Assembly: GCF_902459465.1 (NCBI RefSeq)
Contig: NC_047064.1
Location: 13,640,001-13,704,000 of the forward strand
DNA length: 64,000 nucleotides
Direction: 5' to 3'
DNA from: Asterias rubens
Lineage: Eukaryota
Shown here: positions 7,401 through 34,929 of the stretch, one piece after another
How the letters are laid out: every line of letters begins with the position of its first letter
Numbering within the stretch: position 1 is the stretch's first letter
Position numbers and translations under genes: made by a program
The notes under the pieces: model-generated
The model's input: the letters and a program-made list of their open reading frames with translations, nothing else
The model's database searches: none
What the model was told of the DNA's origin: nothing

Positions 7401-10400
7401 ATAGACGTTGCTACCTACTTTTCATCACCCCCCGAGCCCCCCCCCCCCTTGGGTGCGCCGTTGCAGAGACTATATAGTTTAGAAGTACGGTAAATAGCCA
7501 TATGTACTGGATATGGTGACCTGGAAAGCAGCAAAAAGATGAAAAAGCAAATAGCTGTTTTTTGAGTGCATTGATGAGTGTGCAGAAAATCAGTGTAGAG
7601 TTACGAGCTACTAAAATAGTAGGCTTTTAAAGGTGGTGAATAAGCCCGATTCTTGTTTTCAATCTTAATGTAAAAAAAAAAAAAAAAACATGAAATGATC
7701 CACCTATTACCTGTACGCAACGGTAAACACTGGGCAACTCTCAATGAAATCCACAACCTCGACCACATCACCCATACGGTAACGGTAAAAACCAGATATG
7801 GTCGTCATGGCTATCTCGTACCGTTTGCCAACCTCGACCTCATCCATTAACAGCGTCTCCGGGTTCTCTTCGGAACTGGATTGGGAAACAGAATAAGTCT
7901 AATCATGGAGGAAGGAAGAGAAGGAGCTCGAACGAAGGGACTTCAAAAGTCGCACTTGGTTCTTCACTCAACCATGGTGTCGTATGTCGTATGGATATAA
8001 TACAGAAAAACAACTTTTTTGAGACCTGATAAAATTTGTGTACACTTGTGCTCACCAAATCGAAAAACACAATTAATCGGTCGTCCAGCTGGAGGTCTCC
8101 TATCTTTTTCCACTGGTCAGACAGGGGCATTGTCAGGGTATTCTTTTGTTACTCTGCGGTTTTGCGGGTCGTTCGAGCTCCTTCTCTTCCTTCATCCATG
8201 GTCTAATCATGGTGTACGGTTATTGTACATTGTCTATCAAACCACTTCCTGAAGCAGAACTGAGGCAGACCCTTGCTCTAGGGCTGTGTTAATCACACGT
8301 GCCCCCCAAGATGGAAGAGTTTGGAACGCTAGGTGGCAGCAGACTTACCACGAAAAATCCATTGTTTACATACAGTTCTGAGCCTGCGAACAATTCCTGA
8401 AAAAATTGATTTATCTGGTATGTCTGCTGCCACATAGTGTCCTCTAAAGCCTCCCATTGCAATGATTAATTTGACCATGTGTCATTATACCGCCTTTCTA
8501 TAGGCTGAACCATACTCATATCCAGTACTGCTCATTATCGCATTTTTTTCTAGTCTTCATCGGACCATATCGGACTGTCCTTGCTCTATGCTCAGACCTA
8601 CCTCAGATGTTCTGGGATTAACTCAATCAGCATGTCGTTAGGGAGGAACGTGTACTGCTGTGGTGTCTTATCTTTCCATGTATTAACGCCAATAAACCCT
8701 TCTGTGCACCCATAGCCTGACGTGTATAGTGGGACACCTGCAGTGAAGATAATTTGCGTAGAATAACTATATTATGCTCAGTTGATTTCACGGGAAAACT
8801 AGTCTAACTTCACTTCTTCATCAAAACTTCTTTAAAAGAGACGCCTAGACTTGCCTCAAATCCCAATCCCGTGCCATCGCCATAAAACTATTGTTTTGTG
8901 ATGCTCTGCATTCCCCAATCTGTTCCCCAACCATTCTGGGACCATAATATCAACATTTTGACGGCGGGTATACTTAGGGAACTCTCGCACCAGAATTGGA
9001 CTTGAACCAAGCCTAACGATAACGCGACTTGAATCAAGCCTAGGAGACGCCATGACACAGGTGGGCGATCCTAATATTATGACTTTTCTCTTTTCGATGG
9101 GTGAGGGCGTGTGGACTATTTTGTCAGGAGGATCAAAAACATGTACATGTACTATTATGCAGTTTTATACATGAAAGTTTTGCCAACCAGTTTAACCTTG
9201 CCATCCCACCACCAAGACTGTATTATTAGTTGAACAAACATTGTGAACTTTGTGTTAAAATGCCGTTCTCACACATAATTACCTTTGGTATATCTTGCAT
9301 CGAGCTTCTTTATGTACCCAGAGATGTCGACAGACAATACATGGGCAACAAAAGGCCAGATTCTACGCATGATGCCCACGAAGCCTTTTGCAAACTCCCT
9401 CCTCAGTTCGTCTGCTCGAGCTGGGTCTGCCGTCAAAGCTGCGTCCAGAGACCGTCGAATTCCCTCATCAAGCTGTAACTTCGGGTTAACCCTTCCTAGA
9501 GTCAGATCCTCCAGGAACATCTCCTGTTCGTCTTCCAGCATTTTCATTGCCCTGTAGACTTGCGAGGTAAAAGCCCCAAAAAACTGGCAGATATTTTTGT
9601 CCGTGAGACCGAAGAGCATGCTGACGTAAGTGGCTTCGAAATCGGAGGAAATCTGGAAGCCACTGGGCGGCATGTTCTGGACAGTGGACATAAGAAAATT
9701 TGAGGCGGTACTATCAGGGAAAAACAACACTGGCGCAATACGTGCGCCAGATTTTGTAAATTTTTCCGCGGGCTTCGAGTAAAGAAAGACCATTTTCTGT
9801 ACTGAGTCTGATGGATAGAGTAATCTTGAAACAGCGTTGCCTGCTTTGTGATAATAACTTGAAGTGACCATTGGGATAAGCTTGCCCTTTCCTGTTGTGC
9901 CAGACGAAGTTCCAAATCGCTCCAGTGTTGCCGCAACGCAGACGTTCTTTTCCCCGTCAGCCAGCCTGGTGAAGTAATCTCGATAGTGTTCATACTTAGT
10001 GAGTGGATGCTTCTCACGGAACTCTTGAAGAGATTTGATGTCGCTGAAGCCATGTCTCATGCCGTACTCCGTCTTCGCATCACGGGCGAGCAGCTTCAGA
10101 AGAAAACTCTCATGCTCTTTCCTTGGACGTTTCCAGATTTTTTGCATGTTGCTGTAAACTGAAGGCGCTGTGAGATCAATAATCTGGAAAAACAAGTACT
10201 TGACCAATAGAGTCGCCAAAGTGTGGGTTTCGGAACAACGTTGAGTTGAGATGTGAAGAGCTATCATAGTTGATAGACCGCACAGACCGGCGAAGATGCC
10301 TGGGGAAAAATAAAACAAAAACAATAGAACAACTTCACAATCACATCGGACTTCCTTGGCCGCACTTCTTTGCCTGCATCCTGTTTCCCATCTGCACATC

Positions 10401-13400
10401 AAATCTCTCTCACGTCAAGGGTATTAAGGTGAATGGGTTTCTTTTGACTCTTCAAAATCTATGCTTTCTTTTTTTTCTCTTCATGTCCGCACCTCAAGTG
10501 TTCTTTTTGTTATGTTATTTAGGCGACTTCCAATAAAAACAAATTATCCAACAACAAAAATTAATAATTTTGTGTTGAACAAAAAGAGGGGAAACAGCGG
10601 GTCGGGATTTGAACCCTCGATCTTCGGAAGCGTGCCGGTGCCATAGGGGATTCCACTACGAACATTTTTTATGTCCGACTTTTGGAGAACATGTGCTGAA
10701 GGGAAGGAGATTGATTTAAAAGAAGACACTATCACTACACGTATTTCTTTACATTAGACCGCATCACAATTAATACTCAGTACGTGCACGTAAGGCGTGG
10801 TTTGATGTGCTCGGCACGCACCTCAATCGAGCACGATGCTGGTCCATCGCGCACAAAATCGGGTACACCCCTTTGTTCCATGATTTCTATGTTTTGACAC
10901 CCCGGGCACCCCCATAGTGTTGTTGTATTTCAACACAAACTCAAGCGTGTAAATCATCAGCAATTTTTTCGGAAAAAGATCGTATATGAACATTGCGGCG
11001 ATATATAGAATTCGGAATGTACTACCCTTATTGAACTAATTCTTCAACATTTTGCGTAGCGGCGATTATTAAAAGAAAATGGAATTCGGGCTTTCTTTCC
11101 CTTTAAAAAATAACCCTTTTCGATGGGAACATTTGCAGAGCGGCGATGTTTACTAAAACATGGAATTCGGGCTTTCTTTCCCTTTTTGAAATAGGCCCCT
11201 AATCCTTCATTGGGTGACACAGGGCGATATTTATAGTCACCTGGAAGTGGAATTTTTTTTAAATAAAGCTTTTGTCACTAAAATATGTGTTTTTATGAGA
11301 GGAATGTGAATAAAAAGTTAACTAAGGTCTAAAAATATTAGTTTTGATTGTATTTACAAATTTACGAGTAGGCCCCGACCCGAGAGGGCGCTGTTCGTGA
11401 CGTAATTCAAGGCGCGATATTTGAAGAGAAAATTTGTAGTCAGGCCCCCGTACTCTACGTCTGGGAACATGGCACATCAAAACAAATTCAGACACGATTT
11501 TACACACATACGTATATTGAAACTTGAACATGTTGAACGCCTAGTGGTTTTTACAAAAGCTATTGCTGCTATTTTTATTTAACTATGCGACTTTTTAGTG
11601 ACCAAATGGGTTGTAAGATGTGGGTCTGCCTACGTATTATTACAGAAATACGGCCACGGAGCAGACTGCACGCACGCACTATGGCTGCTGTATAATGTGC
11701 GGACGGTCACATAGGACCTGCACGCACGGTGAATCGCATGCGGTACCAACAAAAAATCGTGTCACTTGGCAAAAGCTAAAAACATACCCTCAAAGTTCAA
11801 AGTTCTCCTCTGGGTTCGTCACGTATTTCAGATACCTTCTTCGACTTCCCACTAGCTGGAAAAATTGTTGGGACGGCGTCGTAATTAAGAATGGCTCTTC
11901 TCGTCATGTCAAAATGAGTGGTGTATCCCGGATTCGAAGCACGACGGCTCGAAGTGTTCGCTGCATAGCGCTGAAAAAGACGTCGGACCGGACCACTTTG
12001 CTCTAGTTAAGCTGACTTTGGCAGCCCACAACCGCCTATACTTGGGATCTGCAGGAAACAGATGAAGACTGACCCCATCTTAAGTTGTTTTGCTGCATTC
12101 AGCAGCAATACACCTGGTCGGCATTGCCGGGAAAATGCCAGAAAAAACTTTTTTCGCAGCCTACAAACTCACGTCTTAGAATTACATGTACTTTTGCACG
12201 TGTGTTTATCTACGCATCGAGGGGGGTCTATGTTTGATCGAGGCAAAGTCTTCCTTTTCCTACGTCACAAAAGGGGTAGGCGGAGTCAAACCCCCAAGCA
12301 CTTAATTAATTTTTTAACATATAAATCGTGACAAAAAATTACTAAAAAAATTGTTTTATTGTTAATAAACATATACTCTTATGTTTAAAAGAAAAAATTC
12401 CTATTTCCAGGTGCCTTTATAATTAATACATGGAATTCGGGCTTGCTTTCCCTTTTGATAGAATCCTTCAATGGGAGTATTTGCACATGGCGATATACAT
12501 GGCATTATGGCTTTCTTTCCCCCCTCTAAAAATAATCCTCCAACAGGGGACATTTTCATAGCGGCGTAAGAACAATGGAATTCAGATTTTCTTTCCCTTT
12601 TGAAAAAATCCTTTAATGGGAAAAATTTGCATAGCATAATATTTATTAATACATGGAATTCGGGCTTTCTTACACTTTTTTCAAATATTACAGGCCTTGC
12701 GGCGATATTTATTAATATGTGGAATTCGGGCTTTCTTTCCCTTAATTGAAATAATCATTCAATGGGGGACACTGCATTTGCATCTTTTTATTTACTTGAT
12801 ACATGGAATTCGGGCTTTCTTTCCCTTTATTGGGACATTGTCGGCGATTGTTTGGTATTATAGGAGCCGATATGCCTGTTTTGAAAGATCAGGATCAGAG
12901 GTTTGGCAGTTAAAACGAACAAACGACGTATGCGTAGAAATTACAGGATGTATATGCCATCACAAACGAACAAGCATACACTATAGATCGACCGTCTTCC
13001 ATGCTAACACACAGCACACTACTTAGTGCGATTGTGCGATCGACCGTAGACTTGATTTCAATTCTTAGATCGCAGTTATTCTTCTCCATATCAGCCACGA
13101 AAAACGCTCCCACATCACGCGCCTCGCCTGAACGTCCGACGTCATACTTTGAGGCTCATGAATAACGCCAGAGACCGGCATCCAAAACCGGCGTGTAGAT
13201 TCACCTTTGACCTCTGTCATTTCACATGCATTTCCACGTACAATACTATACATGTACATAGCGCTATACAGCACAGTGCATGTCATGTAACATACACAGT
13301 GTACAAGTGCGATCACTAGACCGTGACTGAGTAGCTGTAGCCGGCTAGCAAAGTGCCCCTTGAAACCAGGACCGTGTTTACATAGGCCATTAGGCCTCCC

Positions 13401-15304
13401 TAGTTGGTTAACGCTAGACATACATGACATAATCTATTACTCTAGGATCTATGTATAGCGTTAACCAAACAGGTACATGTACATGATTAACTGGCTAAAC
13501 ACTACATGTAGGCCAAATGCACTGGTGGTCGGGTAAGAGGCCCAGTAGGTATCTAGCATGAAACGCTACCTAAGCGAACGTAGGATAAAAAAAAACCAAT
13601 TAAATTTCCATGGAGATACGAACTCGCAGGTATCAGTGATGTAAGCGCGACTGATGACCACTAGGCCATGAGGCCCAATGCATAATACGAGGGTTAACAT
13701 GTATTTGTATCAACAGAGGGGATTATAATCCGGCGAATTAATTCTCGTGTCATGATTTTGCAAACATTGTCACTAAATATGAACTGCTAACGCCTTTAAC
13801 TATGAAGTAGGGTTAAAATGTAGTATAAGATGCCTTTAGGGGTTTTTGACGATGACGTTGTCGTCGTCAAAAACCCCTATTCAATTACGCACGTTCGTCC
13901 ACGGAGGACGCCACCTCGGAGTCTAAATTTGACATTTTTTCACTCATTTCTCAAAAACTACAACACCACAGCAAGTAATATTTTAAGGGAAGCTTTCAAC
14001 TGTCATTATCTTCAAACTGTTTAAGTTTAGTGTAATTCTGTGGACACCATGGTATGTCGTCGTCGTCAAAAACCCCTATTTATATACGCACGTTCGTTAA
14101 ACGAAAACCCTAAGCCTTCGTGTACAAAGCATATTTGTCCACAAAGCATATTTGTCCAGAACTCGGTTATGAAACGAAGAAACAGAGACTGCGCTGTGGT
14201 CCAGAACGTATGTAGAAAAACAAGAAAAAGAGACTTGAGTAGACTCCTCTCAAGAAGTCACAACTCATGATAGGTACATACTGAATTGCATTTACCATAG
14301 AGAATGTTTAACAATAACATGGAAGTGACTGCATCCAGTTATGTTCAAACGCCTAGACTCATCTCAAGAAGTCACAACTCATGATAGGAACAAACTGTAT
14401 GGCATTTACCAAAGAGAATATTTAACAATAACATGGAAGTGACTGCATCCAGTTATATTCAAATGAAGATTATGTGGCTAATTAATGAAGATTTTTAATT
14501 TTGTTTACATTTAGAGGTAAGCTTATGTTCTAAGCTTCAATTTGGTATATGATTTCACTCTTTTGAAGTTATGGTCTAGGAGATTAGGTTTAAAGAAAAA
14601 AACGTGTGCAATTGCTATGGGTTTTAGGCAGAAACAAAGATCTCGACAGAAACAATACCTGTTCCGACTGTAGGTCGGAACAGCTAAAAACAATTCTGCA
14701 ATAAAAAATGAATGAAATTGAGTGAGCACATGTATTTAATAACAGAAGTTACATCCTTATCCCTGGAAAGGTATAAATTTATCAAAATGTATTTTCAAAC
14801 ACAAGTGATAAGTCAGAAATAAACAATTTTGTTTTCTTTCTCAGTCATGGCAAAGCCCCTGCGATGCACCCCTCTCAGCCAGTTTTTCTGATTGCTCCTA
14901 ACGTAAAGTCCTCATTCTGGGGCCCATATTGCCCTTTATTAGAGTAAATACCAAACAGTGTAATTGCGCAGTCGCCGGTGTAAAGCTCCGGACAATGCAT
15001 GCAATGGGCAGATCGTCTGTCATTCATCGGAGCCATTGATGAATGGAGTTTTATAGGGCCAGTTACTTTACCAAGGCAATTTCAGTGCAGCAAACGTTAT
15101 ACGTTCGCTTATGTAGCGTTTCATGCTAGATACCTAGTGGTACATTCTACACCACAAACTCAATGGAGGTATAGTCAATTTACCTGCAGCGGCTTTCACC
15201 GTCCATGATCCGTCACTGGCCCAGCAGTAGTTGGCAGCATACGCCGTGACAAACCCAGACAACATTACCCAAACCAAACACCGAAACTTCCATGTTACCG
15301 CCAT
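4467..15304 (-). CDS. GHDC: GH3 domain-containing protein, paralog A (630 aa, 7 coding exons)
   Basis: Exons (minus) 15184-15304, 9283-10299, 8602-8737, 7711-7875, 5705-5853, 5062-5147, 4467-4685. All GT-AG, phases compatible, total 1893 nt. Motifs FGTSSGTTGKGK, SGYGCTEG, GFYRYRMGD, NQFKMPRK. The symbol denotes the family (GHDC-like); one-to-one orthology is not established. Confidence 0.9.
4733..4782. repeat. 25-bp tandem duplication in the last intron of paralog A
   Basis: tatttgtcataaataaaggtttggc x2. Confidence 0.85.
5240..5604. mobile_element. Foldback (near fully palindromic) Kolobok-like MITE, family K2
   Basis: Starts ttaaaggaacacgttgccttggatcggtcgagttggtc. Arms mirror around gggagagtcaaaaatttgactccc. 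Right end truncated. Copies at 27881-28095 and 48185-48576. Confidence 0.8.
6371..6605. mobile_element. MITE with cccaatttcat...atgaaattggg TIRs
   Basis: Terminal inverted repeat shared with the element at 57208-57443. Confidence 0.6.
7085..7463. mobile_element. hAT-type MITE (379 bp) with perfect 8-bp TSD
   Basis: TIR caacggcgcaccca / tgggtgcgccgttg. CAGAGACT duplicated at 7077-7084 and 7464-7471. Internal poly-G and poly-C tracts. Confidence 0.85.
7904..8200. mobile_element. MITE (297 bp) with about 32-bp TIRs in intron 3 of paralog A
   Basis: catggaggaaggaagagaaggagctcgaacga / tcgttcgagctccttctcttccttcatccatg, flanked by duplicated gtctaat (7897-7903, 8201-8207). Confidence 0.8.
8318..8460. 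mobile_element. Short palindromic MITE, family P (ggtggcagcagacttacc...ggtaagtctgctgccacc)
   Basis: About 140-bp hairpin element. Further copies at 19977-20125, 27424-27570, 42500-42658 and 61530-61658. Confidence 0.75.
10995..12850. repeat. Degenerate minisatellite (about 70-85 bp unit) split by a transposon insertion
   Basis: Core atggaattcgggctttctttccc at about 11079, 11160, 12430, 12507, 12576, 12652, 12718 and 12801. Units also share gcggcgatattt and aatcctt.aatggg. Confidence 0.8.
11235..12416. mobile_element. Kolobok-like non-autonomous element, family K3 (1182 bp), TTAT target duplication
   Basis: TIR agtcacctggaa / ttccaggtgcct with TTAT on both sides. Both ends are homologous to the TTAA-flanked element at 28386-28968. 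Confidence 0.8.
14241..14463. repeat. Tandem duplication, 2 x about 114 bp
   Basis: agactc.tctcaagaagtcacaactcatgatagg...aacatggaagtgactgcatccagttat x2. Confidence 0.85.
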
Positions 15305-16179: not shown

Positions 16180-16370
16180 AGTCTAGTTGGTAAGACACTG
16201 CTCTAGAATTACAACGGTCGTGGGTTCGAATTCCACCCGAGTAATCTACCTGTGATATTTTTTCACAAGACTCGGGAAAGTACTGAGTAAACACTGCTAG
16301 CACACATGGGGTGTATGGGTAAAACAAAACAAAATTAGTATCCTTATCCCCGAGGCAAACTTAACATCGA
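16180..16370 (+). mobile_element. tRNA-derived SINE fragment
   Basis: A-box-like ggtagtctagttggtaagac and B-box gggttcgaattcc, followed by a non-tRNA body. Confidence 0.6.
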
Positions 16371-17057: not shown

Positions 17058-20000
17058 ATGGCGGTAACATGGAAGTTTCGCTGTTTGGTTTGGGTAATGT
17101 TGTCTGGGTTTGTCACGGCGTATGCTGCCAACTTCTGCTGGGCCAGTGACGGATCATGGACGGTGAAAGCTGCTGCAGGTAAATTCATTTCATATGATTT
17201 GAAGAATGAGTTTGTTATTGTTGGAAAGAAGTCTCTGTCATAGCGTTCAACCGCGTAACAAGCTCATGAGTTATCAAAATGTGTGAAGTTCGTTCTTTGA
17301 TATTGTATAAATTTTCCTGGTGTAAGTTTTTCCCACAGATATTATGTTTTAGGCGTAAAAAATGACAAGAAGACAACAATTATGGACAGTATAAAGACTT
17401 AATTTTGCAGTAATGTACTTATTATTTGAAGTTAACAAAATAGGTACACCGCCAACTATAACTTTAGATGGCTCGGTTTGTACATCACCGATGTTGCAGG
17501 AGATTTTGCCCCCCCCCCCTCCCCATCATACGGGCGGCGAATGGTCAAATTCAGAGCCGTATATTAGGAGAGTTTCAAACACTTGCGATTAGAAGCCATT
17601 TTGTTCCTCAAGAAACGCATGGGCGAACACGGGGTGCCAGACTAGTCTGCCCATTGGGTTGTGCTGCGTTTGGAGACAACATGGCGCCCAGCAACCACGT
17701 GACCAAAGAAAAGTGGTCCCACCATTTCACAACTCTCTCAATACACAGCTCGGGTCAAATTGTAATGGTAGCGCCCTCGGATGAATCAACTTCCTATAGC
17801 CCATTTAAGACGGGGTGGGGTCTCTATTAAAAGACACCGGCATTCTAATATTGTTATGGAAGTCTCAAAGAAGTCACAAGGCACAAAAGCCATTGGGAAA
17901 GGTGAGACAGAAAATGAGAACATAATGGAAGCATAATTTGTTCCTTACGCTGGAAATGAGGGAGATTATGGGCAGCAGCAGGGGAACATGATGCACGCAG
18001 GGAATTCCGGAGTGAAGTTATTATACTGTTTTCTTTTACTTTCTCCCAGGGATCTTGGCTGGTTTGTGCGGATTGTCAACTGTGATAGCTCTTCACATCT
18101 CAACTTTACGCTGTTCCGAGACCCACACCCTAGCGACTCTATTGGCCCAGTATTTGATAATGCAGGTTTTCGATCTCATAGCTCCTTCAGTTTACAGAAA
18201 CTTAAAAAAAGTCTGGAAGTATCCAAGGAAGGAGCAAGATAATTTTCTTTTGAAGCTGCTTGCCCGTGATGCGAAGACGGAGTACGGCATGACACACGGC
18301 TTCAGCGACATCAAATCTCTTCAAGAGTTCCGTGAGAAGCATCCACTCACCAAGTATGAGCACTATCGAGATTACTTCACCAGGCTGGCAGACGGGGAAA
18401 AGAACGTCTGCGTTGCGGCAACACTGGAGCGATTTGGAACTTCGTCTGGCACAACAGGAAAGGGCAAGCTTATTCCGATGGTCACTTCAAGTCATTTTCA
18501 GAAAGCAAACACGGTTCTTTCAAGATTACTCTATTCTCCAGACCCAGTGCAGAAGGTGGCTATTCTTTACTCAAAGCCCGCGGAGAAGTTTACGAAATCT
18601 GGCGCACGTATTGCGCCATTGGTGTTTTTTCCCGACAGTACCATCTCAAACTTCTTTATGTCCGCTGTCCAGAACACGCCGCCCAGTGGCTTCCAGATTT
18701 CCTCCGACTTCGAAGCCACTTACGTCAATATGCTGTTCGCTCTCACGGACAAAAATATGGGGCAGTTTTTTGCGCCTTTTGCCTCGCAAGTCTACAGAGG
18801 ATTGAAAATGCTGGAAGACGATCGGGAGATGTTTCTAGAGGATCTGACTGAAGGAAGGGTCAACCCGAAGATACAACTAGATGAGGGAATTCGACGGTCT
18901 CTGGATGCAGCTTTGACGGCAGACCCAGCTCGAGCAGACGAGCTGAGGAGGGAGTTTGCAAAAGGCTTCGTGGGCATCATGGCTAGAATCTGGCCTCATC
19001 TTGTCCACATGTCGACTATCGACATCTCTGGGTACATGAAGAACCTTGAGGCAAGATACTCAAAAGGTAAAGAAACTAACAGAAGTCCTTTTCAATATTA
19101 GCTTTAGACATTTTTTTACGCGAAGTTCATTTCACATTTAATGTGTAAAACGCCATTGGTTTTCATCTTCTGTTTTGCATGCCTCTTCAAATACAGGTCA
19201 TAAGCTGGACAGATGTAATTGGTTGACAAAACTCTCTTCAGATAATTATACGTCAGTGCATTGAAAAAAATCAGATTGGTTGACACAACTCACTATTAAT
19301 ATACGTATATGTGGGCTGGCAATATCTGATTGGTTGATAAAAATCTCTTCAGCTTCAGTGGATTGGCAAGATCTTGATGGTTGGCAAAGCTCTCTTTACG
19401 TCATTTGCTCGCAATATCTAATTGGTTCACAAAACTCTCTTTAAATATACGTCAATGGGTTGGCAAGATCAAGTCGGTTGGTCCGTGACAAACGAGCCCA
19501 CGAAGTGAGAACAATTCTCCTTCAACTTGCGATCGCCCCCCTGGCGTCAACATACATATTCTTTCAAAGGAGTTTTAATGAGATGAGTCGTACAAGAAAT
19601 GAAGAAGAAGTGAAGTTTGAGACTGGTTTACTGTTTATAATAAACGACTTTTCCCTGTTTGTTTTCTGCTATAACATCATGTTACGCATGTTATCTTCAC
19701 TGCAGGTGTCCCACTATACACGTCAGGCTATGGGTGCACAGAGGGACTGATTGGCTTGAATGCATGGAAGGATAAGACACCACAGCAGTATACGTTCCTC
19801 CCTAATGACATGCTGATTGAGTTAATCCCAGAACATCTGAGGTAGGTCTGAAACAGCCCCACCAAAGGAGATTCCCCCGAAGAAGTGATAAAGTTTGGAA
19901 CAAAATGTGATTTTGAACACTGGTTATAAAGGCCCATTGAAAGGTGGCAATACCACCAATTGCAAATTAATAATTGTACTGTGGGACTTTGAGGGGGTGG

Positions 20001-22743
20001 GGCGGGGGCGACGAGATGGCAGCAGAATAACCAGGTAAATTCATTGTTCTCCAAATTGTGCTCATGATCAGAACTACGTAAACTTTGGAAATTTAGATGG
20101 AGAGTCTGCTGCCACCTAGCGTTCAAACGTCTTCCATTGTGAGCTGAACGGTATGACCGTAGACCAAGGTTCTCGGGAAGTAGCCTGGACGTCTGACGTC
20201 ATTCTTCGAGGCTCGATAAAGACAGGGGCTCAGTCTACTCGGGAAGTTGTTTGATAGACAATGTACAACTACCTGTACACAAAGATTATACTTATCTATT
20301 ACTGTTTCCCCAATCCAGTCCTGAAGAGAACCCGGAGACGCTGTTAATGGATGAGGTCGAGGTTGGCAAACGGTACGAGATAGCCATGACCACCGCATCA
20401 GGGTTTTACCGTTACCGTATGGGCGATGTGGTCGAGGTTGTGGATTTCATCGAGAGTTGCCCAGTGTTTACCGTTTCGTACAGGTAAAAGATGAATCACT
20501 ACTAATTTGTTGTTAAAAGTTAGATTGAAAAAAGATTGAGGCTTAAAAAGTGTGCATTTACGCACTCGTAAAACAGCTTGCATATTTCCGCTTTTTACTG
20601 CTTTTCCACCAGGTGATAAATATTGATCCAGATCCATCCGTGGCTAATTCGGATTTTTTGCTCGGATTCAGCGTAAATTTCTGGGTATTTTTGACACAGA
20701 TTATTGGGTCCAGTGACCCTGAAATGGGTCAATACCCCAGGGGACAACATTTTGGGAAATTGTAGCCGAAAGTTATTTTAGAGTGAAGAATCAGTACTAA
20801 ATATCACATTGTTCGATCGGGAAGAACTTGGAATAATAATCAAATACAAAAGATATTCTTTCGAGTGGGACCATTAAAGCAATAGAACAATCACTAGAAA
20901 AACATAATAAACCTTTGGTCTCATGTCAGAACTGGAGAGTACTGAACCTAAATAGGTCTTCTCCTCTAACTAATTATCAAACACAGAAATTCAAGACAAT
21001 CACTTGAAAAAGTATGGTTTACTTTGTTTTAATTTCTAGAACTGGAGAGCTACTGAATCTACGCAGTGAGAAGATTGACGTACTGGTGGTCAATAAAGCC
21101 ATTCAAGAAAGCTTAGAAGGATGGGATGGAGCTACTCTAGTGGAATGGACATGCGCAGAGAGCCCACTTTTATATGAAGACAAAAATGGTACGATTTGAA
21201 GTGTGTATGGTTCCAACAGGGAAGAACAGACATCTTGCATTGGCCACCATGTTTGAGTCAAACAATGAATACGTGTCAATCACGTGAACGCGTCCTGCGT
21301 AGGTCTCAGTCATTGGGTGCGTTCGTTTAGCTTCCCTGGGTCGACCCCGGTGTGTGGCGTTTTCTTTTTCCAGGACGAACGTGTGCAGATAATTACCCAC
21401 GTTTGTCCTGGAAAAAAAAACCGCCACACACCGGGGTCGACCCAGGGAAGCTAAACGAACGCACCCATTATTACAGGCCCTAATTTTAACCAAGTGAGGG
21501 CGCTGTATGGGCTTGCCACGATGTAGAATGCAAGCAGTCGTAATGTGTTTACTGACATCATTTTAATAGCAAGTATCCAAAACTGTACCCGTCATTTTTA
21601 ATCTTAGATCCGTAGGCCTACCGTATTTCTTTTAAAGGGCAGTTTTAATCACATTAATGTTCAAGACTATAGGCTTTTAATTTGTCTAAGAGGCAGGAAC
21701 AAAGTAAACAAACTTTCATTTTATTCTTGACATTCGGAATCAAATAATTAAAATCTGTTTCATTTTGTCTTGCTTCCAGATGGTGAATACGACATGTTTT
21801 ATTTGCTCTTCGTTGAGCTCGAATCAGACATAGAGATCCGATTATCTGCTGATCAGAAGTCACTGGTAATTATACTTCTTTAACTAATAGTCATTTCATG
21901 CCGGTTTTTAGACTTGTCCACAAGTCAATTAAATTGTTTCGGAGAAAGGAATCTACGTCCCTTTTCGAAAACCGCGGTTTCGGTTAAAGTCCACACCAAA
22001 GTGCACGTTTTCAAACCGACAAAAGCTTAGCCTGACAAAAACCAGTGGTTTCGAAAAGAGGTTATAATTATGCACTAGAAGCACAATCATTTGGCCAATA
22101 ACATCCCTTTAATCGTTTTCAACTCCCTAGGAAATATAGGCCTACAGCCCCGAGCTGCCGTGGCGCTCCGAGGGCTTTTTAATACGCAATATCAACCTCT
22201 ACTCCCGCAGATACCAATTTATACACCTGGGTGAAGAGAAGCAATTATAGTCATTAGTCAAGTATCTTGCTGAATGACACAAGTGTCACGGGCGGGATTC
22301 GAACCCACAATTTGGTGACTGAATTCGATGCTCTTGATCACTCGGCCATGACACTCTATATTATTGAAGTGTGACAAATCGTACTCACGGTAGGGCCTAT
22401 TAATGTAAGGTTATGTGGACAAGAATGAGCTATTGAACGTCAAACATAAACTTGCCCTACCATCTTTGGCATCATGTTCATAACTTAAGGTTATTTTCCG
22501 ATTTCATTACAGTTCGACAAATCTCTGCGGAAACAGCATGAGTTCTACGAGCAATACCGGAAAGTGGGCACAATCTGCGGGGCTTGCGTTGAGGTCGTTC
22601 GCCCTGGCTCCTTCAATAAACTTAAATATCACATCATAGCGACCTCTACGTCCAGTTATAACCAGTTTAAGATACCCAAGAAGTTGCGCACCAAAGCTCT
22701 TCTTGATTTTATGTTGGACTGTGTTGTTAATGATAACGATTAG
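17058..22743 (+). CDS. GHDC: GH3 domain-containing protein, paralog B (634 aa, 7 coding exons)
   Basis: Exons 17058-17178, 18050-19066, 19706-19841, 20319-20483, 21040-21188, 21780-21865, 22513-22743. GT-AG, open frame of 1905 nt. Motifs FGTSSGTTGKGK, SGYGCTEG, GFYRYRMGD, NQFKIPKK. Confidence 0.92.
17555..17760. repeat. Dispersed repeat shared with 25534-25775
   Basis: cttgcgattagaag.cattttgttcc.caagaaacgcatgggcgaacacggggtgccagactagtctgcc is nearly identical at both sites. Confidence 0.75.
21315..21466. mobile_element. MITE family H (GGGTGCGTTCG TIRs) with an 80-bp TGT...ACA core
   Basis: Perfect 36-bp arms gggtgcgttcgtttagcttccctgggtcgaccccgg. The central 21351-21430 segment is itself a hairpin flanked by CCGG. 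Confidence 0.75.
22085..22355 (-). mobile_element. tRNA-derived SINE (second subfamily) in intron 6 of paralog B
   Basis: Minus-strand head gtgtcatggccgagtgatcaagagcatcgaattc...gtgggttcgaatcccgcccgtgacacttgtg. Body fragment repeated at 51725-51838. Confidence 0.7.
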
Positions 22744-26102: not shown

Positions 26103-29100
26103 TCAATTATTGTTATTTACAACACACTCCTGCATGAAATCCAACAGCACCTTAGTGCGCAACTTCTTAGGCATTTTGAACTGGTTGTAATTGGCCGTTG
26201 AGTTCGCTATAATGTGCGTTTTAAGTTTGTTGAAGGATCCCGGGCGAACGACCTCAACGCAAGCCTCGCATATTGTGCCGAATTGACGATAGTGTTCGTA
26301 GAACTCATGCTGTTTTCGCAGGGATTTGTCGAACTGAAAAAAGGAAGAACAAAAATAGAACTTGTTTAAGAGAAGGAATGAAATGAAATTATGTTTTAAA
26401 GGCACTGGACATTATTGGAATTACTCAAAATAATTGTTAGCACAACTATTTACTTGGTAACGAGTAATGGAGAGCTGTTGATAGTATACAACATTGTGAG
26501 AAACAGCTCCCTCTGAGGTAACGTGGTTTTTGAGAAAGAGGTAATTTATTACTCAAATAATGAAAGACTTCAGCTGAAGCCTTTTGTTACACATCTGAAA
26601 GCACGCAAAGTTCTTCAACAAGGCTGTCTTCTTTCATAATTCTCATGTAAATTTGATTATCAATTGAGTTCAAATTTTCATGTTCAAGGTTTAATATTTT
26701 ATGCATATGTTGGGATACACCAAGTGAGAATACTGGTGTTTGACAATCATCAGACGTGTGCAGTGCCCTTAAAGACGTTAAACTAGATTCACTTTGCTTT
26801 CGTGTAATATAGAAAACCTCGCCCGAAATCCACCGACTTTATGCAAGTACGAAATGAAAAGGTTATTCAGATTTGATGCTTGATATTTCCGTGTTATAGA
26901 AGACCTCACCCGAAAGCCATCGACTTTGGCTTGATCACTTAAACTTTTGTAAATGTTAAAATACGGTTCACAATCCAGAACCTTGATGTCTCCTCGGGCT
27001 TCGTGACGATTTCAGAACCCCCATCTTGGCTGGAATTTCATCTTTGGGAGGGCAAGGCCATATTCATTCTTCCAGTCTGTTGGGGAACCATTGAAGGGCA
27101 CCCAGGCCAAGACCAGGGCAACATCGCCCATGGCCTCCATGGCTTTCGTAAAATTCCAGTCATGCCCTTTTCAATCAAACTTGTTTTCCAACATCACAAA
27201 CAGATGGCTTGTAAAGTCCCGTTCATAAAATGCAGTTTCGAGTTTCGAGAAAGCATATTTACCATTGACTTCTGATCAGCAGATAACTGGATTTCCTTGT
27301 CTGATTCGAGCTCAACGAAAAGCAAATAAAACATGTCATATTCACCATCTATAAGCAAGAAGACAACGCACAAAGTTGAAGCAATTAATATTTTTGATAG
27401 ATACAAATTTGTTGCACACTTTTATGGGAAACTTTGGGACGCTAGGTGGCAGCAGACTTACCAGGTAAATTTCCATTGTTTACGTAGTTCTGAGCATGTG
27501 GACAATACCGAGAACAATGGATTTTACCTGGTAAGTCTGCTGCCACCGAGTGTCCCAAAAGCCTCCCATTAACCGACTTGTCGTGATATTTTATTTTCTT
27601 CAAACCAACTGTAAAATCTGGTTCAAACAGTTACCATTTTTGTCTTCGTACAAAAGTGGGCTCTCTGCGCATGTCCATTCCACTAGAGAAGCTCCATCCC
27701 ATCCTTCTAAGCTTTCTTGAATGGCTTTATTGACCACCAGTACGTCAATCTTCTCACTGCGTAGATTCAGTAGCTCTCCAGTTCTAGGGAATTAAAACAA
27801 AGTGAAACAGTTAAAACACTCAGATAAAGCTCTGTTAGCAGAGCGCTTGTATACATCATAGGGCAAAAACTGTCATACATTGGTCGAGTTGGTCTTTATT
27901 GAAAACCGTTTGTTATAAAATGCATATGAGTAGAAAGATGCTGTAAAAGTAGAATACATGCCTCGAAATTGCACGGTTTTCCTTTTACCTCGTCGCTTTT
28001 TTAAAACAACTTTCCAACCATATGCATTTTATAACAAACGGTTACAAACGGTTTTTATATACCAACTCGTCCGATCCAAGGCAACGTGTCCCTTTCACCC
28101 CAATGCTACACACAGAGGACATACCTGTACATAACGGTAAACACGGGGCAAAACTCGATGAAATCCACAACCTCGACAACGTCGCCCAAACGGTAACGGT
28201 AAAACCCTGATGTGGTCGTTATAGCAATCTCATACCTTTGGCCAACCTCGACCTCATCCATTAAGAGCGTATGTGGGCTCTCTTTGGTACTGTAGTGAGA
28301 AGAAAATAATACATAATAACTGTGTGGATGTACATCAGCATCAACAGTTCCTTGTGTCATGGTGAATAACTAGAGGTTGACTTAAAGTCACATGGAAATA
28401 TAGTTTTTTTCTTTCAATCATAAGAGTATATGCTTATGAACAATAAAACACTTTTTTTTAGTAATTGTTTGTCACGATTTGTATGTTAAAAAATAGATAA
28501 AGTTGTTTGGGGAGCTGACTCCGCTTACCCCTTTTTAGACGTCAATCGAAAGATGGACGAACCTAACGGAGCGCATGCCAAACTTCGGGTAATTTTGAAC
28601 CTTTGTGAGGGCATGTTTTTAGCTTGCGATTCACCGTACAGGGTTACCCGAGTGGACCGTCCGCATGGCAGTCATTTAGTGCATGGAGTCTGCTCCGTGA
28701 CCGTAGTTCTGTACGTAGTCATCATACCGATCAGGTATCAAGACGTAGTGTACGGAGCCAGACTACACATTTTGTGCTCAAATATCGCGCCTCGATTGAC
28801 GTCACGAACAGCGCCCTCTCGGGTCGGGGCCTCTCTTAAATTTGTAAATAAAATGAGAACTAATATTTAGAACCTTAGTTAATGTTTATCCACATTCCCC
28901 TTATCAAAACACATATATGTTAGTGGCAAAAAGTTTATTTTGAAAAAAAAAAACACTTCCAGGTGACTTTAAGTTTTTAAATATTAACAAAACAAGTGTT
29001 GCATGGTTTAGATTGAAACCTTTACGAGTTTGTATAATCGGCCTACGGAGTTCGATTGTTAAAGACACTAGACACGTTTGCATAATTGTTTTTCTAAAAA

Positions 29101-32100
29101 AGTGTTTTTCTGCATTCAGCAGCAATACACCTGGTCGGCATTGCCGGAAAAAACAAAACAATTTTTTTTGGAAACGTACAAACTCACGACTTGGTCCGTA
29201 CATGTACTTTGCAATTGTGTTTACTCTACGCATTACAGGCAAAGTCTGCCTCGACTGACGTCACGAACAGCGCCCTCTCGGGTCGGGGTCTACTCTTAAA
29301 TTTGTAAATAACATAAGAACTGATTTTTTTAAACCTTAGTTGGCCTACCCAAACATTCGCGGCCCAACAAGAGTAACAGTTCACAAATGCTAGAAAGTAC
29401 CAGGCTACTGTTACAAGTCGGAATCTGAACAAGGAACGATCTGGCCGACCCGAAACTGGTCTATCTGCTGCAAACATCCAATGTTGCATTCCTCATGATG
29501 ATTTTCATTTGGCCTGCGTCCGAACTTGGTAGACCATGGAGGACTGAGAGTTCGTCCACTTTTCTAGCAAATTTGTGAGCAACAAAGCAAAAACCTCACC
29601 TTCCATACTACGGTGTTTGATTCTGTTAAAACCCTTTCATTTTTGTGCGCAAGCCAATTAAAATCTGATTAGTAATTAGCTAGTGCTCACTCATGCGGAA
29701 CAGCAGAGGATTGATTTGGTAAGAATTAAAAAGCTATGACCCTGGTCCACCGAAACTGAGTGCCAGATTTTTGTAAAACTTAAACAAAAAATCCATTTGA
29801 TACATTGTTTCTAAACGTATACTTTTCTTTTAAACATCCTGTATTACCAATAGTGGCTAGTGACTTCAACGAGTTTGTCTGATCGGTTTGAGTTTGGATG
29901 ATCATTGCGAGAGGCTTTACCTGAGATGTTCCGGGATAAACTCTACGACCATTTGATGAGGGAGGAACGTATACTGCTGTGGTGTCGTATCCACCCATGT
30001 ATTCACGCCGATTAACCCTTCTGTGCATGCATAGCCTGACGAGAATAGTCGGGTACCTGCAGTGAAGACAGATCTAACATTATGTTGAGTAGATACAACT
30101 TTACAGCAAGTTGTCCTTTCGTTTTGCTTGTCATTTTGTCCATTTTGCTCGTCTTGTGTTTTTGGAGTTGTTGTTTTTGTTTATTTTCGTATTGCAAATA
30201 CAACGAACCCACACTCTGTTGATTAAAAACACCAGAGTTTGAATCCGGTGTTCTTAACCGCAGGCCATGACACGCCACATATTTTTTATATAGAAAGTAA
30301 GTAGACTAACAACTTCAAACATTACTTTGCAGCTAGTCTCGACCACTAGAAAAGCATTGCATACTCATGACAGAAGATAGCTGAAAACACATTGAGCTTC
30401 TAGTTATTTCGTAATTACCTTTTGTATATGTTGCATTAAGCTTCTTCATGTACCCAGAGATGTCGATAGTCGATACGTGTGTCATATGAGGCCAGATTCT
30501 ACCCACGATGCCCACGAAGCCTTTAGCAAACTCCCTCCTCAGTTCGTCTGCTCGCGCTGGGTCTGCCGTCAAAGCTGCGTCCAGAGACCGTCGAATTCCC
30601 TCATCGAGCTGTAACTTCGGGTTGACCCTTCCTAGAGTCAGATCCTCTAAAAACATCTCATGTTCGTCTTCCAGCATTTTCAGTGCCCTGTAGACTTGCG
30701 AGGCAAAAGGCGCAAAAAACTGGCCGATATTTTTGTCGGTGAGAGCAAAGAGAGTATGGACGTACGTCGCTTCAAAATCGGTGGAAATCCGCAAGCCAAT
30801 TGGTGGCAGGTTCTGAATAGCGGACATGAACAAGTCTACGATTTTGCTCTCCGGAATGAACATTACTGGCGCAATGCGCATTCCAGATTTCGTGAACTTC
30901 TCCGCGGGTTTACAATATAGCATAAAAGCTTTCTGTACCGGGCTCGGCGAGAAAAGTAGGCTTGAGATTGCCAAAACAACTCGCTCAAACTCTTTCGAGC
31001 TGACCATCGGAATAAGCTTGCCCTTTCCTGTTGTGCCAGACGAAGTTCCAAATCGTCGCAATTTGGTCGCAACGCAGACGTTCTTTTCCCCGTCTGCCAG
31101 CCTGGTGAAGTAATCTCGATAATGCTCATACTTAGTGAGTGGATGCTTCTCACGAAACTCTTGAAGAGATTTGATGTCGCTGAAGCCGTGTGTCATGCCG
31201 TACTCCGTCTTCGCATCACGGGCGAGCAGCTTCATAAGAAACTTCTCTTGCTCTTCCATAGGACGTTGCCAGACCTTTTCGATTTCAGAGTAGACAGAAG
31301 AGGCCATGAGACTAGGAATCTGCTGCACAAAGTACTCAACCAGTAGAGTCACTAAAGTGTGGGTTTCGGAACAGCATACAGTTGAGATGTGAAGAGCTAT
31401 AACGGTTGACAATCCGCAAAAACCAGTCAAGATGCCTGGGAGAACGACAAGAAACTCTATTTAAAAGGAACGTACCATTGGTTCTTTGAACCCTTGATTG
31501 ATTTAACCATCATACTAAATGTTACTAGGTCTACATACATGCAGTAAAGCTAAAAAGAAACTGAACATTTCATTCCAAAAGGTGAGTTTAAAGATTGATG
31601 CAAATGAGATACAGTTGAGGTGGTGGTGTCACACCCAGATCACTTTGTTTACAGTCACACATGAAGAGCTTTAAAGGAACATTGCAGAATTGGTTTTGCT
31701 AGCAAACAAGTTGCTGGCAGTATAAGCACTTTATGTAATCCACCATATACATCAACTAACAAACCTGTAAAAGTTTGAGATCGATCGGCCATCTGGGTCA
31801 CGAGAGAATAGTGAAAACCGATTACAAATTTTGCATTGCATCGATGCCCCCCAAAAATGAATAAAACGCTCACTGAGCGATAAACTCAAAATGTGATATC
31901 ACATTATTTGTTTCTCATCAAATATGAAATTTTAGACTGAAATATTTAAATGGATGTTTTCTACTATCATCATCATTAGACCGTGTAAGTTTTATGTAAA
32001 TCTGTGATCTTCACGATTTTTGTTTATTACCAATTCTGTAATGTTCCTTTAACAGTTGATTTGTATAGCTGTTATCTACCCGGAATTTACACCGATACTC

Positions 32101-32223
32101 ACCAATGACAGTTTTTATCATCCACGATACATCACTGGTCCAACAGTAGTTGGCAGCATACGCCGTCACCAACCCAGAAAACATCACCCACACCAAACAG
32201 CGAAACTTCCATGTTACCGCCAT
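26103..32223 (-). CDS. GHDC: GH3 domain-containing protein, paralog C (634 aa, 7 coding exons)
   Basis: Exons (minus) 32103-32223, 30419-31435, 29921-30056, 28125-28289, 27635-27783, 27263-27348, 26103-26333. GT-AG, open frame. Motifs FGTSSGTTGKGK, SGYACTEG, GFYRYRLGD, NQFKMPKK. Confidence 0.92.
26396..26772. mobile_element. Kolobok-like MITE, family K1
   Basis: ttaaaggcactggacattattgg...tgtgcagtgcccttaa. Confidence 0.8.
27881..28095. mobile_element. Foldback MITE family K2, internally deleted
   Basis: ggtcgagttggtc...accaactcgtccgatccaaggcaacgtgtcccttt. Ends about 30 bp from the exon 4 donor of paralog C. Confidence 0.75.
28386..28968. mobile_element. Kolobok-like element family K3, short derivative (583 bp)
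   Basis: ttaa|agtcacatggaa...ttccaggtgact|ttaa. A further internal fragment lies at 29080-29320. Confidence 0.8.
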
Positions 32224-33126: not shown

Positions 33127-33161
<35 letters not shown>

Positions 33162-34886: not shown

Positions 34887-34929
34887 TGTTCTAATGAGTG
34901 CAAAAACATCCCCTTTCGATGAATGTGTG

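What the first reader, a model, noticed from the sequence alone, without database searches (positions are those of the whole stretch)
18481..18680. Hypervariability confined to segments predicted to line the acyl-substrate pocket
Seen: directly after motif I the paralogs read TSSYYHKAGNAVSRLLYPSDS (A), TSSHFQKANTVLSRLLYSPDP (B), SSKEFERVVLAISSLLFSPSP (C), RPTEFTKVSMAITSKLSSVSP (D), KALSGVSNFVSFPRRLTKISP (E), LSSISGSLIFSVMRIVNPPSP (F). Other variable patches are the QF.A.FAS strand (QFFGAFTS, QFFAPFAS, QINAPFAS, QLVAAFAS, QFLAPFAS), the residues before D(I/V)S (EIS in E), and those before motif II (TSGY, SSGY, SPAY, TIAY, SGAY). Established: in plant GH3 structures (AtGH3.12, JAR1) the helices after motif I, the beta8-beta9 region and the residues preceding motif II form the acyl-acid site. 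Inference: the paralogs have diverged in substrate specificity, possibly under positive selection.
Basis: partly seen in the sequence, partly recalled or inferred. Interest (0 to 1): 0.75.

Follow-up and report, generated by a model that had tools for sequence, protein, structure and literature searches.

The report
Variable pocket patches in GH3 paralogs
Six neighbouring copies of a GH3-type acyl-acid-conjugating enzyme gene in a sea-star-like genome differ most in a short helix just after the ATP-binding loop. That helix carries substrate-pocket residues in plant relatives, so the copies may take different substrates, but adaptive (positive) selection is not shown.

Summary
The peptide strings and coordinates are correct. 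The window holds six intact, seven-exon GH3-family genes (A-F). B is spliced in RNA exactly as modelled. The 21 codons after motif I (B: 18484-18546) are the most variable 21-codon stretch of the protein (permutation p<5e-5).

"Confined to pocket segments" is overstated.

Much of the contrast comes from two blocks in the large exon. They are 93-100% identical in DNA among all six copies, synonymous sites included, which indicates gene conversion.

Seven columns map robustly onto published plant acyl-site residues. All seven vary among the copies, while the ATP/AMP motifs are almost invariant. The register inside the post-motif-I helix is ambiguous.

The helix is also the most variable, indel-prone region across 111 other animal GH3 proteins.

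Site models find a neutral-like class (omega about 1) and no support for omega above 1. The youngest pair, A/B, is suggestive only (24 nonsynonymous to 4 synonymous differences, p=0.14).

Verdict: a likely case of pocket divergence between old paralogs; selection unproven. A new member of a known kind.

The parts
17058..22740 (+). Paralog B, a complete GH3-family gene with seven coding exons: 17058-17178, 18050-19066, 19706-19841, 20319-20483, 21040-21188, 21780-21865, 22513-22740.
   Evidence: tblastn to P0003 and splice-site modelling. RNA joints 19066|19706, 20483|21040, 21188|21780 and 21865|22513 are GT..AG and match the model. PF03321 E=1.5e-59.
18433..18483 (+). Motif I (phosphate-binding loop, FGTSSGTTGKGKLIPMV) of B. 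It lies at the 3' end of homogenised block 1.
   Evidence: Identical in A-D and F; E has four substitutions in this stretch (T121, S128, V130, S133).
18484..18546 (+). Post-motif-I segment of B (TSSHFQKANTVLSRLLYSPDP, columns 135-155). This is the most variable stretch of the protein and is predicted to be an alpha-helix (B residues 137-151).
   Evidence: Entropy maximum with permutation p<5e-5. pN 0.51. 17 of 21 codons fall in the omega=1 class. Helix with pLDDT 87-91 in the AlphaFold2 model of homologue P0003.
18610..18678 (+). IAPLVFF strand plus the following helix of B (columns 177-199). Columns 180/181 are homologous to plant acyl-site residues Val174/Leu175.
   Evidence: both alignments agree on 180/181. 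Paralog residues VLVVFA and LVMMFF at these columns. 16 of 25 codons in columns 175-199 are fast.
18763..18786 (+). QFFAPFAS strand of B (columns 228-235). Column 232 is homologous to AtGH3.6 Val231. Only mildly variable.
   Evidence: 3 of 9 codons fast; mean entropy 0.75.
18997..19020 (+). Strand before DIS in B (HLVHMSTI, columns 306-313). Column 313 is homologous to AtGH3.6 Ile312.
   Evidence: (both alignments agree), plus 68 and 79 (5 of 8 codons fast).
19708..19749 (+). Start of the third coding exon of B (VPLYTSGYGCTEGL, columns 330-343): pre-motif-II residues and motif II. Columns 336, 338 and 343 are homologous to plant Met337, Ala339 and Tyr344.
18232..18456 (+). Homogenised block 1 in B (columns 51-125). 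It is 93-100% identical in DNA among all six paralogs.
   Evidence: Pairwise synonymous difference (pS) 0.06-0.28 here against 0.6-0.9 outside for distant pairs. Nucleotide identity profile. Codon identity test. Tree incongruence.
18829..18969 (+). Homogenised block 2 in B (columns 250-296).
4470..15304 (-). Paralog A. Exons: 15304-15184, 10299-9283, 8737-8602, 7875-7711, 5853-5705, 5147-5062, 4685-4470. Post-motif-I segment at 9803-9865.
26106..32223 (-). Paralog C. Exons: 32223-32103, 31435-30419, 30056-29921, 28289-28125, 27783-27635, 27348-27263, 26333-26106. Post-motif-I segment at 30939-31001.
38101..44900 (+). Paralog D. Exons: 38101-38221, 39978-40994, 41236-41371, 42160-42324, 43395-43543, 43655-43740, 44673-44900. 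Post-motif-I segment at 40412-40474.
47623..55079 (+). Paralog E, the most divergent copy. Exons: 47623-47746, 49083-50090, 51526-51661, 52245-52409, 53147-53289, 54015-54100, 54861-55079. Post-motif-I segment at 49517-49576, one codon shorter than in the others.
   Evidence: Its variable region is held by probable RNA runs.
57048..62730 (+). Paralog F. Exons: 57048-57168, 58255-59265, 60536-60671, 61304-61468, 61949-62094, 62645-62730. The last exon was not found inside the window. Post-motif-I segment at 58689-58751.

Best explanation
The window carries six old tandem paralogs of an animal GH3-family (ANL-superfamily) adenylating enzyme. All six appear intact within the window (F's last exon lies outside it). 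B is shown to be transcribed and spliced as modelled, and E's variable region occurs in probable RNA libraries.

Two stretches of the large exon, and exon 5 of the seven-exon model in five of the six copies, have been homogenised by gene conversion. Between these blocks the original deep divergence survives as islands.

The largest island is the helix that follows the phosphate-binding loop (motif I). It and several smaller islands correspond to the elements that form the acyl-acid pocket in plant GH3 enzymes.

The catalytic and nucleotide-binding motifs are kept, while every position that can be mapped securely onto a plant acyl-site residue differs among the copies, mostly by changes in the size of apolar side chains. 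The most likely reading is therefore that the six enzymes keep the same chemistry (acyl-adenylate formation followed by amide formation) but have pockets of different shape, and so probably different acyl substrates.

Shown: gene structure, the mosaic of converted blocks and divergent islands, the homology mapping, and the neutral-like substitution regime. Inferred: pocket lining in three dimensions and differences in substrate specificity. Not shown: positive selection. The fast sites evolve at omega about 1, and the same helix is the least constrained, indel-prone part of the family in general, so part of its variability is probably tolerated drift on its solvent-exposed face.
For: Six intact open reading frames share intron positions, and B's splicing is confirmed by RNA.

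Family membership: PF03321 E about 1e-60; profile E about 1e-130 to solved plant GH3 structures; AlphaFold2 model of the 57%-identical homologue P0003 with pLDDT 95.8 and TM 0.78-0.84 to AtGH3.15.

Mosaic: dS is 0.13 and 0.23 in the blocks against 0.6-2.4 elsewhere. Among amino-acid-invariant columns, codons are fully identical in 78 of 103 inside the blocks against 48 of 152 outside (p=3e-12). Introns and flanks cannot be aligned. In the blocks the six copies are monophyletic (96% support); in the non-block parts A-D separate (99/97%) from E and F, which fall among homologues not encoded in this window. Columns 430-478 are homogenised in A, B, C, D and F but not in E.

Pocket: all 7 robustly mapped acyl-site columns vary (p=0.04) and 6 of 7 are in the fast class (p=0.006), while motifs I-III are almost invariant. 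The segment is a confident helix, not a disordered loop. In the youngest pair A/B the patches show 24 nonsynonymous to 4 synonymous differences (omega about 2.6) against omega 0.27 in the rest of the gene (Fisher p=0.002).
Against: M2a and M8 add nothing over M1a and M7, in every partition and also with only the four less-saturated copies.

The A/B excess over neutrality is not significant (p=0.14), and the patches were chosen after seeing the amino-acid differences.

Across 111 non-window homologues the same helix has the highest entropy (3.55 bits) and carries indels. Paralog variability tracks family variability (rho 0.47-0.48). The pattern therefore follows the general constraint landscape of the family.

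71 of 100 fast sites lie outside the patches.

The register inside the helix is ambiguous by 3-7 residues, because the sea-star clade is 7 residues shorter there. If the register is counted from the motif-I proline, the plant contact positions (P+5, +9, +13, +16) land on columns 137, 141, 145 and 148. These are less variable (mean 1.36 bits) than the rest of the helix (1.96 bits).

No substrate is known for any animal GH3 protein in the searched literature.
Confidence: 0.6

Rival explanations
1. Neutral mosaic. The patches are simply the structurally tolerant parts of the protein, such as a partly exposed helix and loops. They drifted apart in old duplicates. They look special only because homology-dependent gene conversion keeps erasing differences in the flanking, protein-constrained stretches. 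The paralogs need not differ in substrate.
For: The fast class has omega about 1 with no omega above 1. The same regions are the most variable and indel-prone across the family. The helix near the N-terminus, which has no link to the pocket, is nearly as variable. On the motif-I-anchored register, the putative pocket-facing helix positions are the less variable ones. A short, protein-conserved but unconverted segment (columns 209-226, dS 1.58) fits conversion being limited by the length of homology rather than by selection.
Against: All seven securely mapped acyl-site columns vary, and mostly stay apolar while changing in size (for example A/V/L/F at column 180 and A/V/I at 313). That pattern fits buried pocket positions better than free drift. 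All six genes keep intact frames and catalytic motifs despite saturated synonymous divergence, which argues for retained, non-redundant function. In A/B the nonsynonymous-to-synonymous ratio in the patches is about ten times that of the rest of the gene.
Confidence: 0.3
2. Diversifying (positive) selection. Recurrent adaptive substitution in the acyl pocket, with selection also removing conversion tracts that would homogenise it.
For: A/B show 8.5 nonsynonymous to 0.5 synonymous differences in columns 136-150, 10.5 to 1.5 in columns 301-315, and 24 to 4 across all patches. Block 1 ends at the last residue of motif I in five of the six copies. C and D are close almost everywhere but as distant as unrelated pairs in columns 131-210 (pS 0.65-1.0).
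Against: No likelihood-ratio test is significant. The binomial test for omega above 1 in A/B gives p=0.14, and the windows were chosen post hoc. Deep branches are saturated and there are only six sequences, so power is low in both directions.
Confidence: 0.08
3. Artefact. The copies are assembly duplicates or decaying pseudogenes, so the variable patches have no functional meaning.
For: None found. One metagenome contig (L001) is an A/C chimera, but that could itself be an assembly artefact.
Against: The six open reading frames are distinct and intact with conserved splice sites. The copies have unalignable introns. RNA contigs match B's variable segment with one mismatch over 440 bases. E's variable region is held by probable RNA runs. 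Purifying selection acts on about 60% of codons (omega about 0.1).
Confidence: 0.02

Closest known systems
Plant GH3 acyl acid amido synthetases (AtGH3.6, OsGH3.8, AtGH3.5, AtGH3.11/JAR1, AtGH3.12/PBS3, AtGH3.15, VvGH3-1)
   Same: The same Pfam family, and the same fold by proxy through the P0003 model. The same three nucleotide-binding and catalytic motifs and the same two-domain architecture. In plants, paralogs likewise keep the AMP site and vary the acyl-site residues to take different acids (PMC10747189, PMC9894192, PMC11253546). The variable elements here correspond to those acyl-site elements.
   Different: Only 20-27% identity. An animal lineage with an extra hydrophobic N-terminal exon. 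The post-motif-I segment is 6-7 residues shorter than in plants and other animals. The helix is amphipathic rather than mostly apolar. No substrate is known. Here the paralogs are additionally homogenised in blocks by gene conversion.
Vertebrate GHDC (GH3 domain-containing protein) and other animal GH3 homologues, such as the Acanthaster planci 'GH3.8-like' proteins P0003/P0035 and the Amphiura filiformis protein P0007
   Same: The same family. The window proteins show a weak match to the vertebrate GH3 N-terminal model PF25146 (below its cut-off). The full-length relatives P0035/P0036 start with the same hydrophobic leader. The nearest named relative is 57% identical.
   Different: Here there is a six-gene tandem array with head-to-head pairs. 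In the literature searches run here I found GHDC only as a listed gene and found no paper on its function.
Concerted-evolution mosaics in tandem gene families where function-determining sites stay distinct, for example the primate long- and middle-wave opsin genes (from my own knowledge, not tested here)
   Same: Conversion homogenises most of the coding sequence, synonymous sites included, while short segments that determine specificity remain divergent. Trees built from the two kinds of segment conflict.
   Different: In the opsins the functional role of the divergent sites is shown experimentally and selection against conversion is supported by population data. Here both are only inferred.

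Membership tests
GH3 family (PF03321; ANL superfamily of adenylating enzymes) | Match to the family's N-terminal domain model above the curated threshold | tested here: met
   B, E and F large exons: E 1.5e-59 to 8.4e-61, 202-209 bits against a cut-off of 23.6.
GH3 family (PF03321; ANL superfamily of adenylating enzymes) | Motif I (S/T-S-G-T-T-x-G-x-x-K phosphate loop), motif II (Y-x-x-T/S-E) and motif III (Y-R-x-G-D) | tested here: met
   All three motifs are present in all six copies. Changes are conservative and few: T121 and S128 in E; G/A/S at column 338 (the plant Ala339 acyl-site position); S339 in E; M/L at column 408.
GH3 family (PF03321; ANL superfamily of adenylating enzymes) | Full-length homology to solved GH3 structures | tested here: met
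   A profile of 117 sequences that includes the six window exons gives E 3e-130 to 2e-121 against ten GH3 sequences in the PDB, over profile positions 39-602. B's large exon alone gives E=1e-20.
GH3 family (PF03321; ANL superfamily of adenylating enzymes) | Two-domain GH3 fold | tested here: met
   By proxy only. The AlphaFold2 model of P0003 (57% identical to B) has pLDDT 95.8. The top 30 Foldseek hits are all plant GH3, with TM 0.78-0.84 and rmsd 3.2-3.8 angstroms to the open form of AtGH3.15. The window proteins themselves were not modelled.
GH3 family (PF03321; ANL superfamily of adenylating enzymes) | C-terminal lysine motif (Q-x-K-x-P-R/K) of the mobile domain | tested here: met
   NQFK(M/I)P(K/R)K is present in A-E. 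F's last exon lies outside the window.
GH3 family (PF03321; ANL superfamily of adenylating enzymes) | ATP-dependent conjugation of an acyl acid to an amino acid or amine | not testable with these tools
   Requires an enzyme assay.
Acyl-pocket specificity divergence as in plant GH3 subgroups | Residues homologous to the acyl site differ between paralogs while AMP-site residues are conserved | tested here: met
   Columns 180, 181, 232, 313, 336, 338 and 343 all vary, and 6 of 7 are in the fast class (p=0.006). Motifs are almost invariant. The residue lists come from PMC10747189 and PMC9894192.
Acyl-pocket specificity divergence as in plant GH3 subgroups | The variable residues lie within contact distance of the ligand in three dimensions | not testable with these tools
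   The structure tool returns no coordinates. The helix register is ambiguous by 3-7 residues.
Sites under positive selection (omega above 1) | A significant likelihood-ratio test for a class with omega above 1 | tested here: not met
   My own maximum-likelihood implementation. M1a/M2a 2dlnL was 0.0, 0.0 and 1.4 for the three partitions, and M7/M8 was 2.0. With A-D only the values were 0.0-0.9 and 0.4-2.5. All have p>0.28.
Concerted evolution by gene conversion | Synonymous homogenisation in tracts, conflict between trees of tract and non-tract segments, and a tract that excludes one copy | tested here: met
   p=3e-12; 96% against 99/97% conflicting support; columns 430-478 homogenised in all copies except E.

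The most novel reading that the evidence does not exclude
The array works as a modular enzyme repertoire. A catalytic scaffold is kept uniform by exon-internal gene conversion, while selection protects short pocket-forming islands from conversion. The result would be six substrate-specific acyl-conjugating enzymes in an animal. This would be a first functional clue to the animal GH3/GHDC family and to an unknown conjugate metabolism in echinoderms.
Probability: 0.25. Interest if true: 0.6.

Novelty: new member of a known kind. Interest (0 to 1): 0.4.

Why it matters
My literature searches found no biochemical function for any animal GH3-family protein. A six-copy array with intact catalytic motifs and divergent pocket-homologous residues gives a natural panel for substrate screening, and the helix and strands to swap are already marked. 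It is also a clean example of how gene conversion can make ordinary old divergence look like local hypervariability. Anyone running selection tests on such arrays needs to keep this in mind.

Tried and rejected
Primary structure papers (Westfall 2012 and 2016, Sherp 2018, Peat 2012) are not held by the paper tool. Acyl-site residue lists were taken instead from PMC9894192, PMC10747189 and, for PBS3 Tyr112, bioRxiv 10.1101/601948.

Three-dimensional mapping of the variable residues was not possible. Structure prediction returns no coordinates and none appear in /data.

An orthologue-based constraint test failed for lack of divergence. The metagenome contig L001 is identical to A over about 235 codons. 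Its 5' part resembles C/D, which could be a real haplotype or an assembler chimera across the identical block, so it was not used as evidence. RNA contigs of a second organism label differ from B at only 2 of 247 bases.

The contig carrying P0002 could not be fetched.

Site models for omega above 1 were run on three partitions and on A-D only. None was significant.

A permutation test on the longest run of identical codons was only marginal (p=0.09). The block against non-block contrast is the stronger test.

Searches for literature on echinoderm or other animal GH3 function returned nothing relevant.

The +1-frame ORFs overlapping the large exon in A and B (9544-10053 and 18332-18805) are absent from C-F and were dismissed as chance.

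One search was an empty script.
Full report
WHAT IS THERE

The window is animal DNA. The closest named relatives of the encoded proteins are from the sea star Acanthaster planci (57% identity) and the brittle star Amphiura filiformis.

tblastn with the Acanthaster protein P0003, followed by splice-site modelling, gives six tandem GH3-family genes, A to F. They share intron positions and have intact reading frames. A short first coding exon was then found for each copy. It encodes a hydrophobic N-terminus (MAVTW...). The large exon that holds the finding is therefore exon 2 of seven.

A and B lie head to head, with first exons at 15304-15184 (-) and 17058-17178 (+). C and D are also head to head. 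E and F follow on the + strand. F's last exon is not in the window.

RNA reads and RNA-library contigs reproduce four of B's introns to the base. One 440-base contig covers 18497-18936 with a single mismatch. E's variable region is also held by probable RNA runs.

Family membership is well supported. PF03321 matches at E about 1e-60. A 117-sequence profile matches every solved plant GH3 enzyme at E 1e-121 to 1e-130. The AlphaFold2 model of P0003 (pLDDT 95.8) superposes on the open form of AtGH3.15 at TM 0.78-0.84.

THE OBSERVATION

The finding's coordinates are codons 134-200 of B's large exon.

Columns 135-155 of the six-way alignment are exactly the most variable 21-column window of the protein. 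Their mean entropy is 1.68 bits against 0.56 overall, and none of 20,000 column shuffles reached that value. Pairwise nonsynonymous difference there is 0.51, against 0.01-0.30 in most other segments.

The variability is not confined to the four listed patches. Columns 22-50, part of a helix near the N-terminus, are second (1.28-1.35 bits). Columns 159-161 and 175-199 are also high. The QF strand is close to background. Of 100 codons assigned to the fast class by a nearly-neutral codon model, 29 lie in the patches. The patches are enriched (odds ratio 4.9, p=3e-6) but not exclusive.

WHY THE CONTRAST IS SO SHARP

Two blocks of the large exon, columns 51-125 and 250-296, are 93-100% identical in DNA among all six copies. 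The introns and flanks cannot be aligned even between the closest pair.

Synonymous divergence (dS) is 0.13 and 0.23 in the two blocks, against 0.6-2.4 elsewhere. Among columns where the amino acid is invariant, the codon is identical in all six copies at 78 of 103 positions inside the blocks against 48 of 152 outside (p=3e-12).

A short stretch that is conserved in protein but not in DNA (columns 209-226, dN 0.06, dS 1.58) shows that protein constraint alone does not produce low dS here.

Trees conflict. In the blocks the six copies form one clade (96% support). In the remaining parts of the exon A-D form a clade (99%), while E and F fall among homologues not encoded in this window (97%). Columns 430-478 are homogenised in A, B, C, D and F but not in E. 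A universal nucleotide-level constraint cannot explain that exclusion.

This is concerted evolution by gene conversion. The variable patches are therefore the surviving old divergence between converted tracts.

DO THE PATCHES LINE THE POCKET?

Published acyl-site residues come from three sources:
- OsGH3.8: Arg130, Leu137, Val174, Leu175, Met337, Ala339 and Tyr344 (PMC10747189).
- AtGH3.6 inhibitor contacts: Tyr134, Leu175, Tyr178, Tyr179, Phe184, Thr193, Tyr195, Val231, Ile312, Met337 and Ala339-Ser341 (PMC9894192).
- PBS3: Tyr112, from a docking study (bioRxiv 10.1101/601948).

The single-sequence and profile alignments agree on the following mappings:
- Val174/Leu175 map to columns 180/181.
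- Val231 maps to column 232.
- Ile312 maps to column 313.
- Met337, Ala339 and Tyr344 map to columns 336, 338 and 343.

All seven columns vary among the paralogs: VLVVFA, LVMMFF, APPPAP, VIIIIA, GGGAAA, GGASGG and FLLFIF. Most stay apolar while changing in size. Six of the seven are in the fast class (p=0.006). Motifs I-III are almost invariant.

The post-motif-I segment corresponds to the plant helix that carries Arg130, Tyr134 and Leu137. In the P0003 model it is a confident helix (B residues 137-151, pLDDT 87-91), not a floppy loop. The register inside it is uncertain, however. The sea-star clade is 7 residues shorter here than other animal and plant GH3 proteins, and the two alignments differ by 3-7 residues.

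If the register is counted from the motif-I proline, the plant contacts (P+5, +9, +13, +16) fall on one helical face, at columns 137, 141, 145 and 148. Column 141 is K/K/R/K in A-D, matching the specificity-determining Arg130, but N in E and S in F. These four columns are less variable (1.36 bits) than the other helix positions (1.96 bits). A good part of the helix's variability may therefore sit on faces that do not touch the substrate. Coordinates would settle this, and the tools do not give them.

IS IT SELECTION?

I wrote a Goldman-Yang codon likelihood with models M0, M1a, M2a, M7 and M8. I ran it on the partitions between the converted blocks, using the topology ((A,B),(C,D),(E,F)).
- Columns 126-249: M1a equals M2a (2dlnL 0.0) and M7/M8 gives 2.0 (p=0.37). 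39% of codons have omega=1 and 61% have omega about 0.1.
- The N-terminal partition gives 0.0, and columns 297-429 give 1.4.
- With only A-D, which are less saturated (tree length 1.5-2.2), the largest class estimate is omega=1.24 for 34% of sites, with 2dlnL 0.9 and 2.5 (p>0.28).

The youngest pair, A/B, is suggestive. In the four patches there are 24 nonsynonymous and 4 synonymous differences (omega about 2.6), against omega 0.27 in the rest of the gene (Fisher p=0.002). In columns 136-150 alone the counts are 8.5 to 0.5. The excess over neutrality is not significant (p=0.14), and the patches were defined from amino-acid differences, which biases the comparison.

Across 111 non-window homologues (117-row alignment A1) the same helix is the most variable region (3.55 bits) and carries indels. 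Paralog variability tracks family variability (rho 0.47-0.48).

The regime is therefore best described as neutral-like turnover in the family's least constrained elements. Some of those elements are pocket elements.

CONCLUSION

The inference of pocket divergence is plausible and passes the tests that could be run. Positive selection is not demonstrated.

The mechanism I consider most likely (confidence 0.6) is this: six old paralogs retain adenylation and amide-forming chemistry, have differently shaped acyl pockets, and appear as islands of divergence because gene conversion homogenises the scaffold around them. The main rival is tolerated drift with no functional difference (0.3).

Compared with what is known, this is a new animal instance of the pattern established for plant GH3 subfamilies, combined with a familiar concerted-evolution mosaic. 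My literature searches found no paper on echinoderm GH3 genes or on the function of animal GH3/GHDC.

Noticed in passing
window 15184-17178 and 32103-38221: A and B, and likewise C and D, lie head to head. Their first coding exons are 1.75 kb and 5.9 kb apart, and the A and B first exons encode nearly identical peptides. This suggests inverted duplication and possibly shared bidirectional promoter regions.
   Followed up: partly
window 16172-16243 (+): A borderline tRNA-like match (Rfam RF00005, 30.4 bits against a cut-off of 29) sits in the A/B intergenic region. It may be a tRNA-derived repeat.
   Followed up: no
window 1810-2439 (-): An open reading frame matches rhodopsin-family 7TM receptors (PF00001, E=6e-28, transmembrane helices 1-4). 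It is a neighbouring GPCR gene fragment.
   Followed up: partly
window 21300-21470 and 17547-17745: Short stretches in B's introns have very high depth in RNA libraries (summed contig word depth up to about 76,000), many loose ends and reads that fit two places. They look like copies of an abundant repeat or mobile element.
   Followed up: no
L001:1-2506 (ENA metagenome contig) against window 8311-10304 and 30412-31932: The contig is identical to A over about 235 codons, but its 5' flank and first roughly 45 codons resemble C/D. It is either a recombinant haplotype or an assembler chimera across the identical block.
   Followed up: partly
window 18622: RNA reads and a contig from a second organism label carry G>A here. 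This changes B's Val181 to Met at a column homologous to plant acyl-site Leu175. C and D have Met at this column.
   Followed up: no
alignment A1, between B residues 143 and 144 (window about 18510): The sea-star-like clade (the six window copies plus P0002, P0003, P0004, P0035 and P0079) lacks 7 residues in the post-motif-I segment that other animal GH3 proteins have. Plant GH3 proteins are about 6 residues longer there.
   Followed up: partly
window 21040-21188 and the matching exon in A, C, D and F: The fifth coding exon (columns 430-478) is almost identical in DNA in five copies (pS 0-0.25) but saturated against E (pS about 0.6). This is a conversion tract that excludes one copy.
   Followed up: yes
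window 40412-40630 against 30783-31001: C and D are close over most of the gene (pS 0-0.3) but as distant as unrelated pairs in columns 131-210 and in the last exon (pS 0.5-1.0). Their similarity elsewhere is therefore probably secondary.
   Followed up: partly
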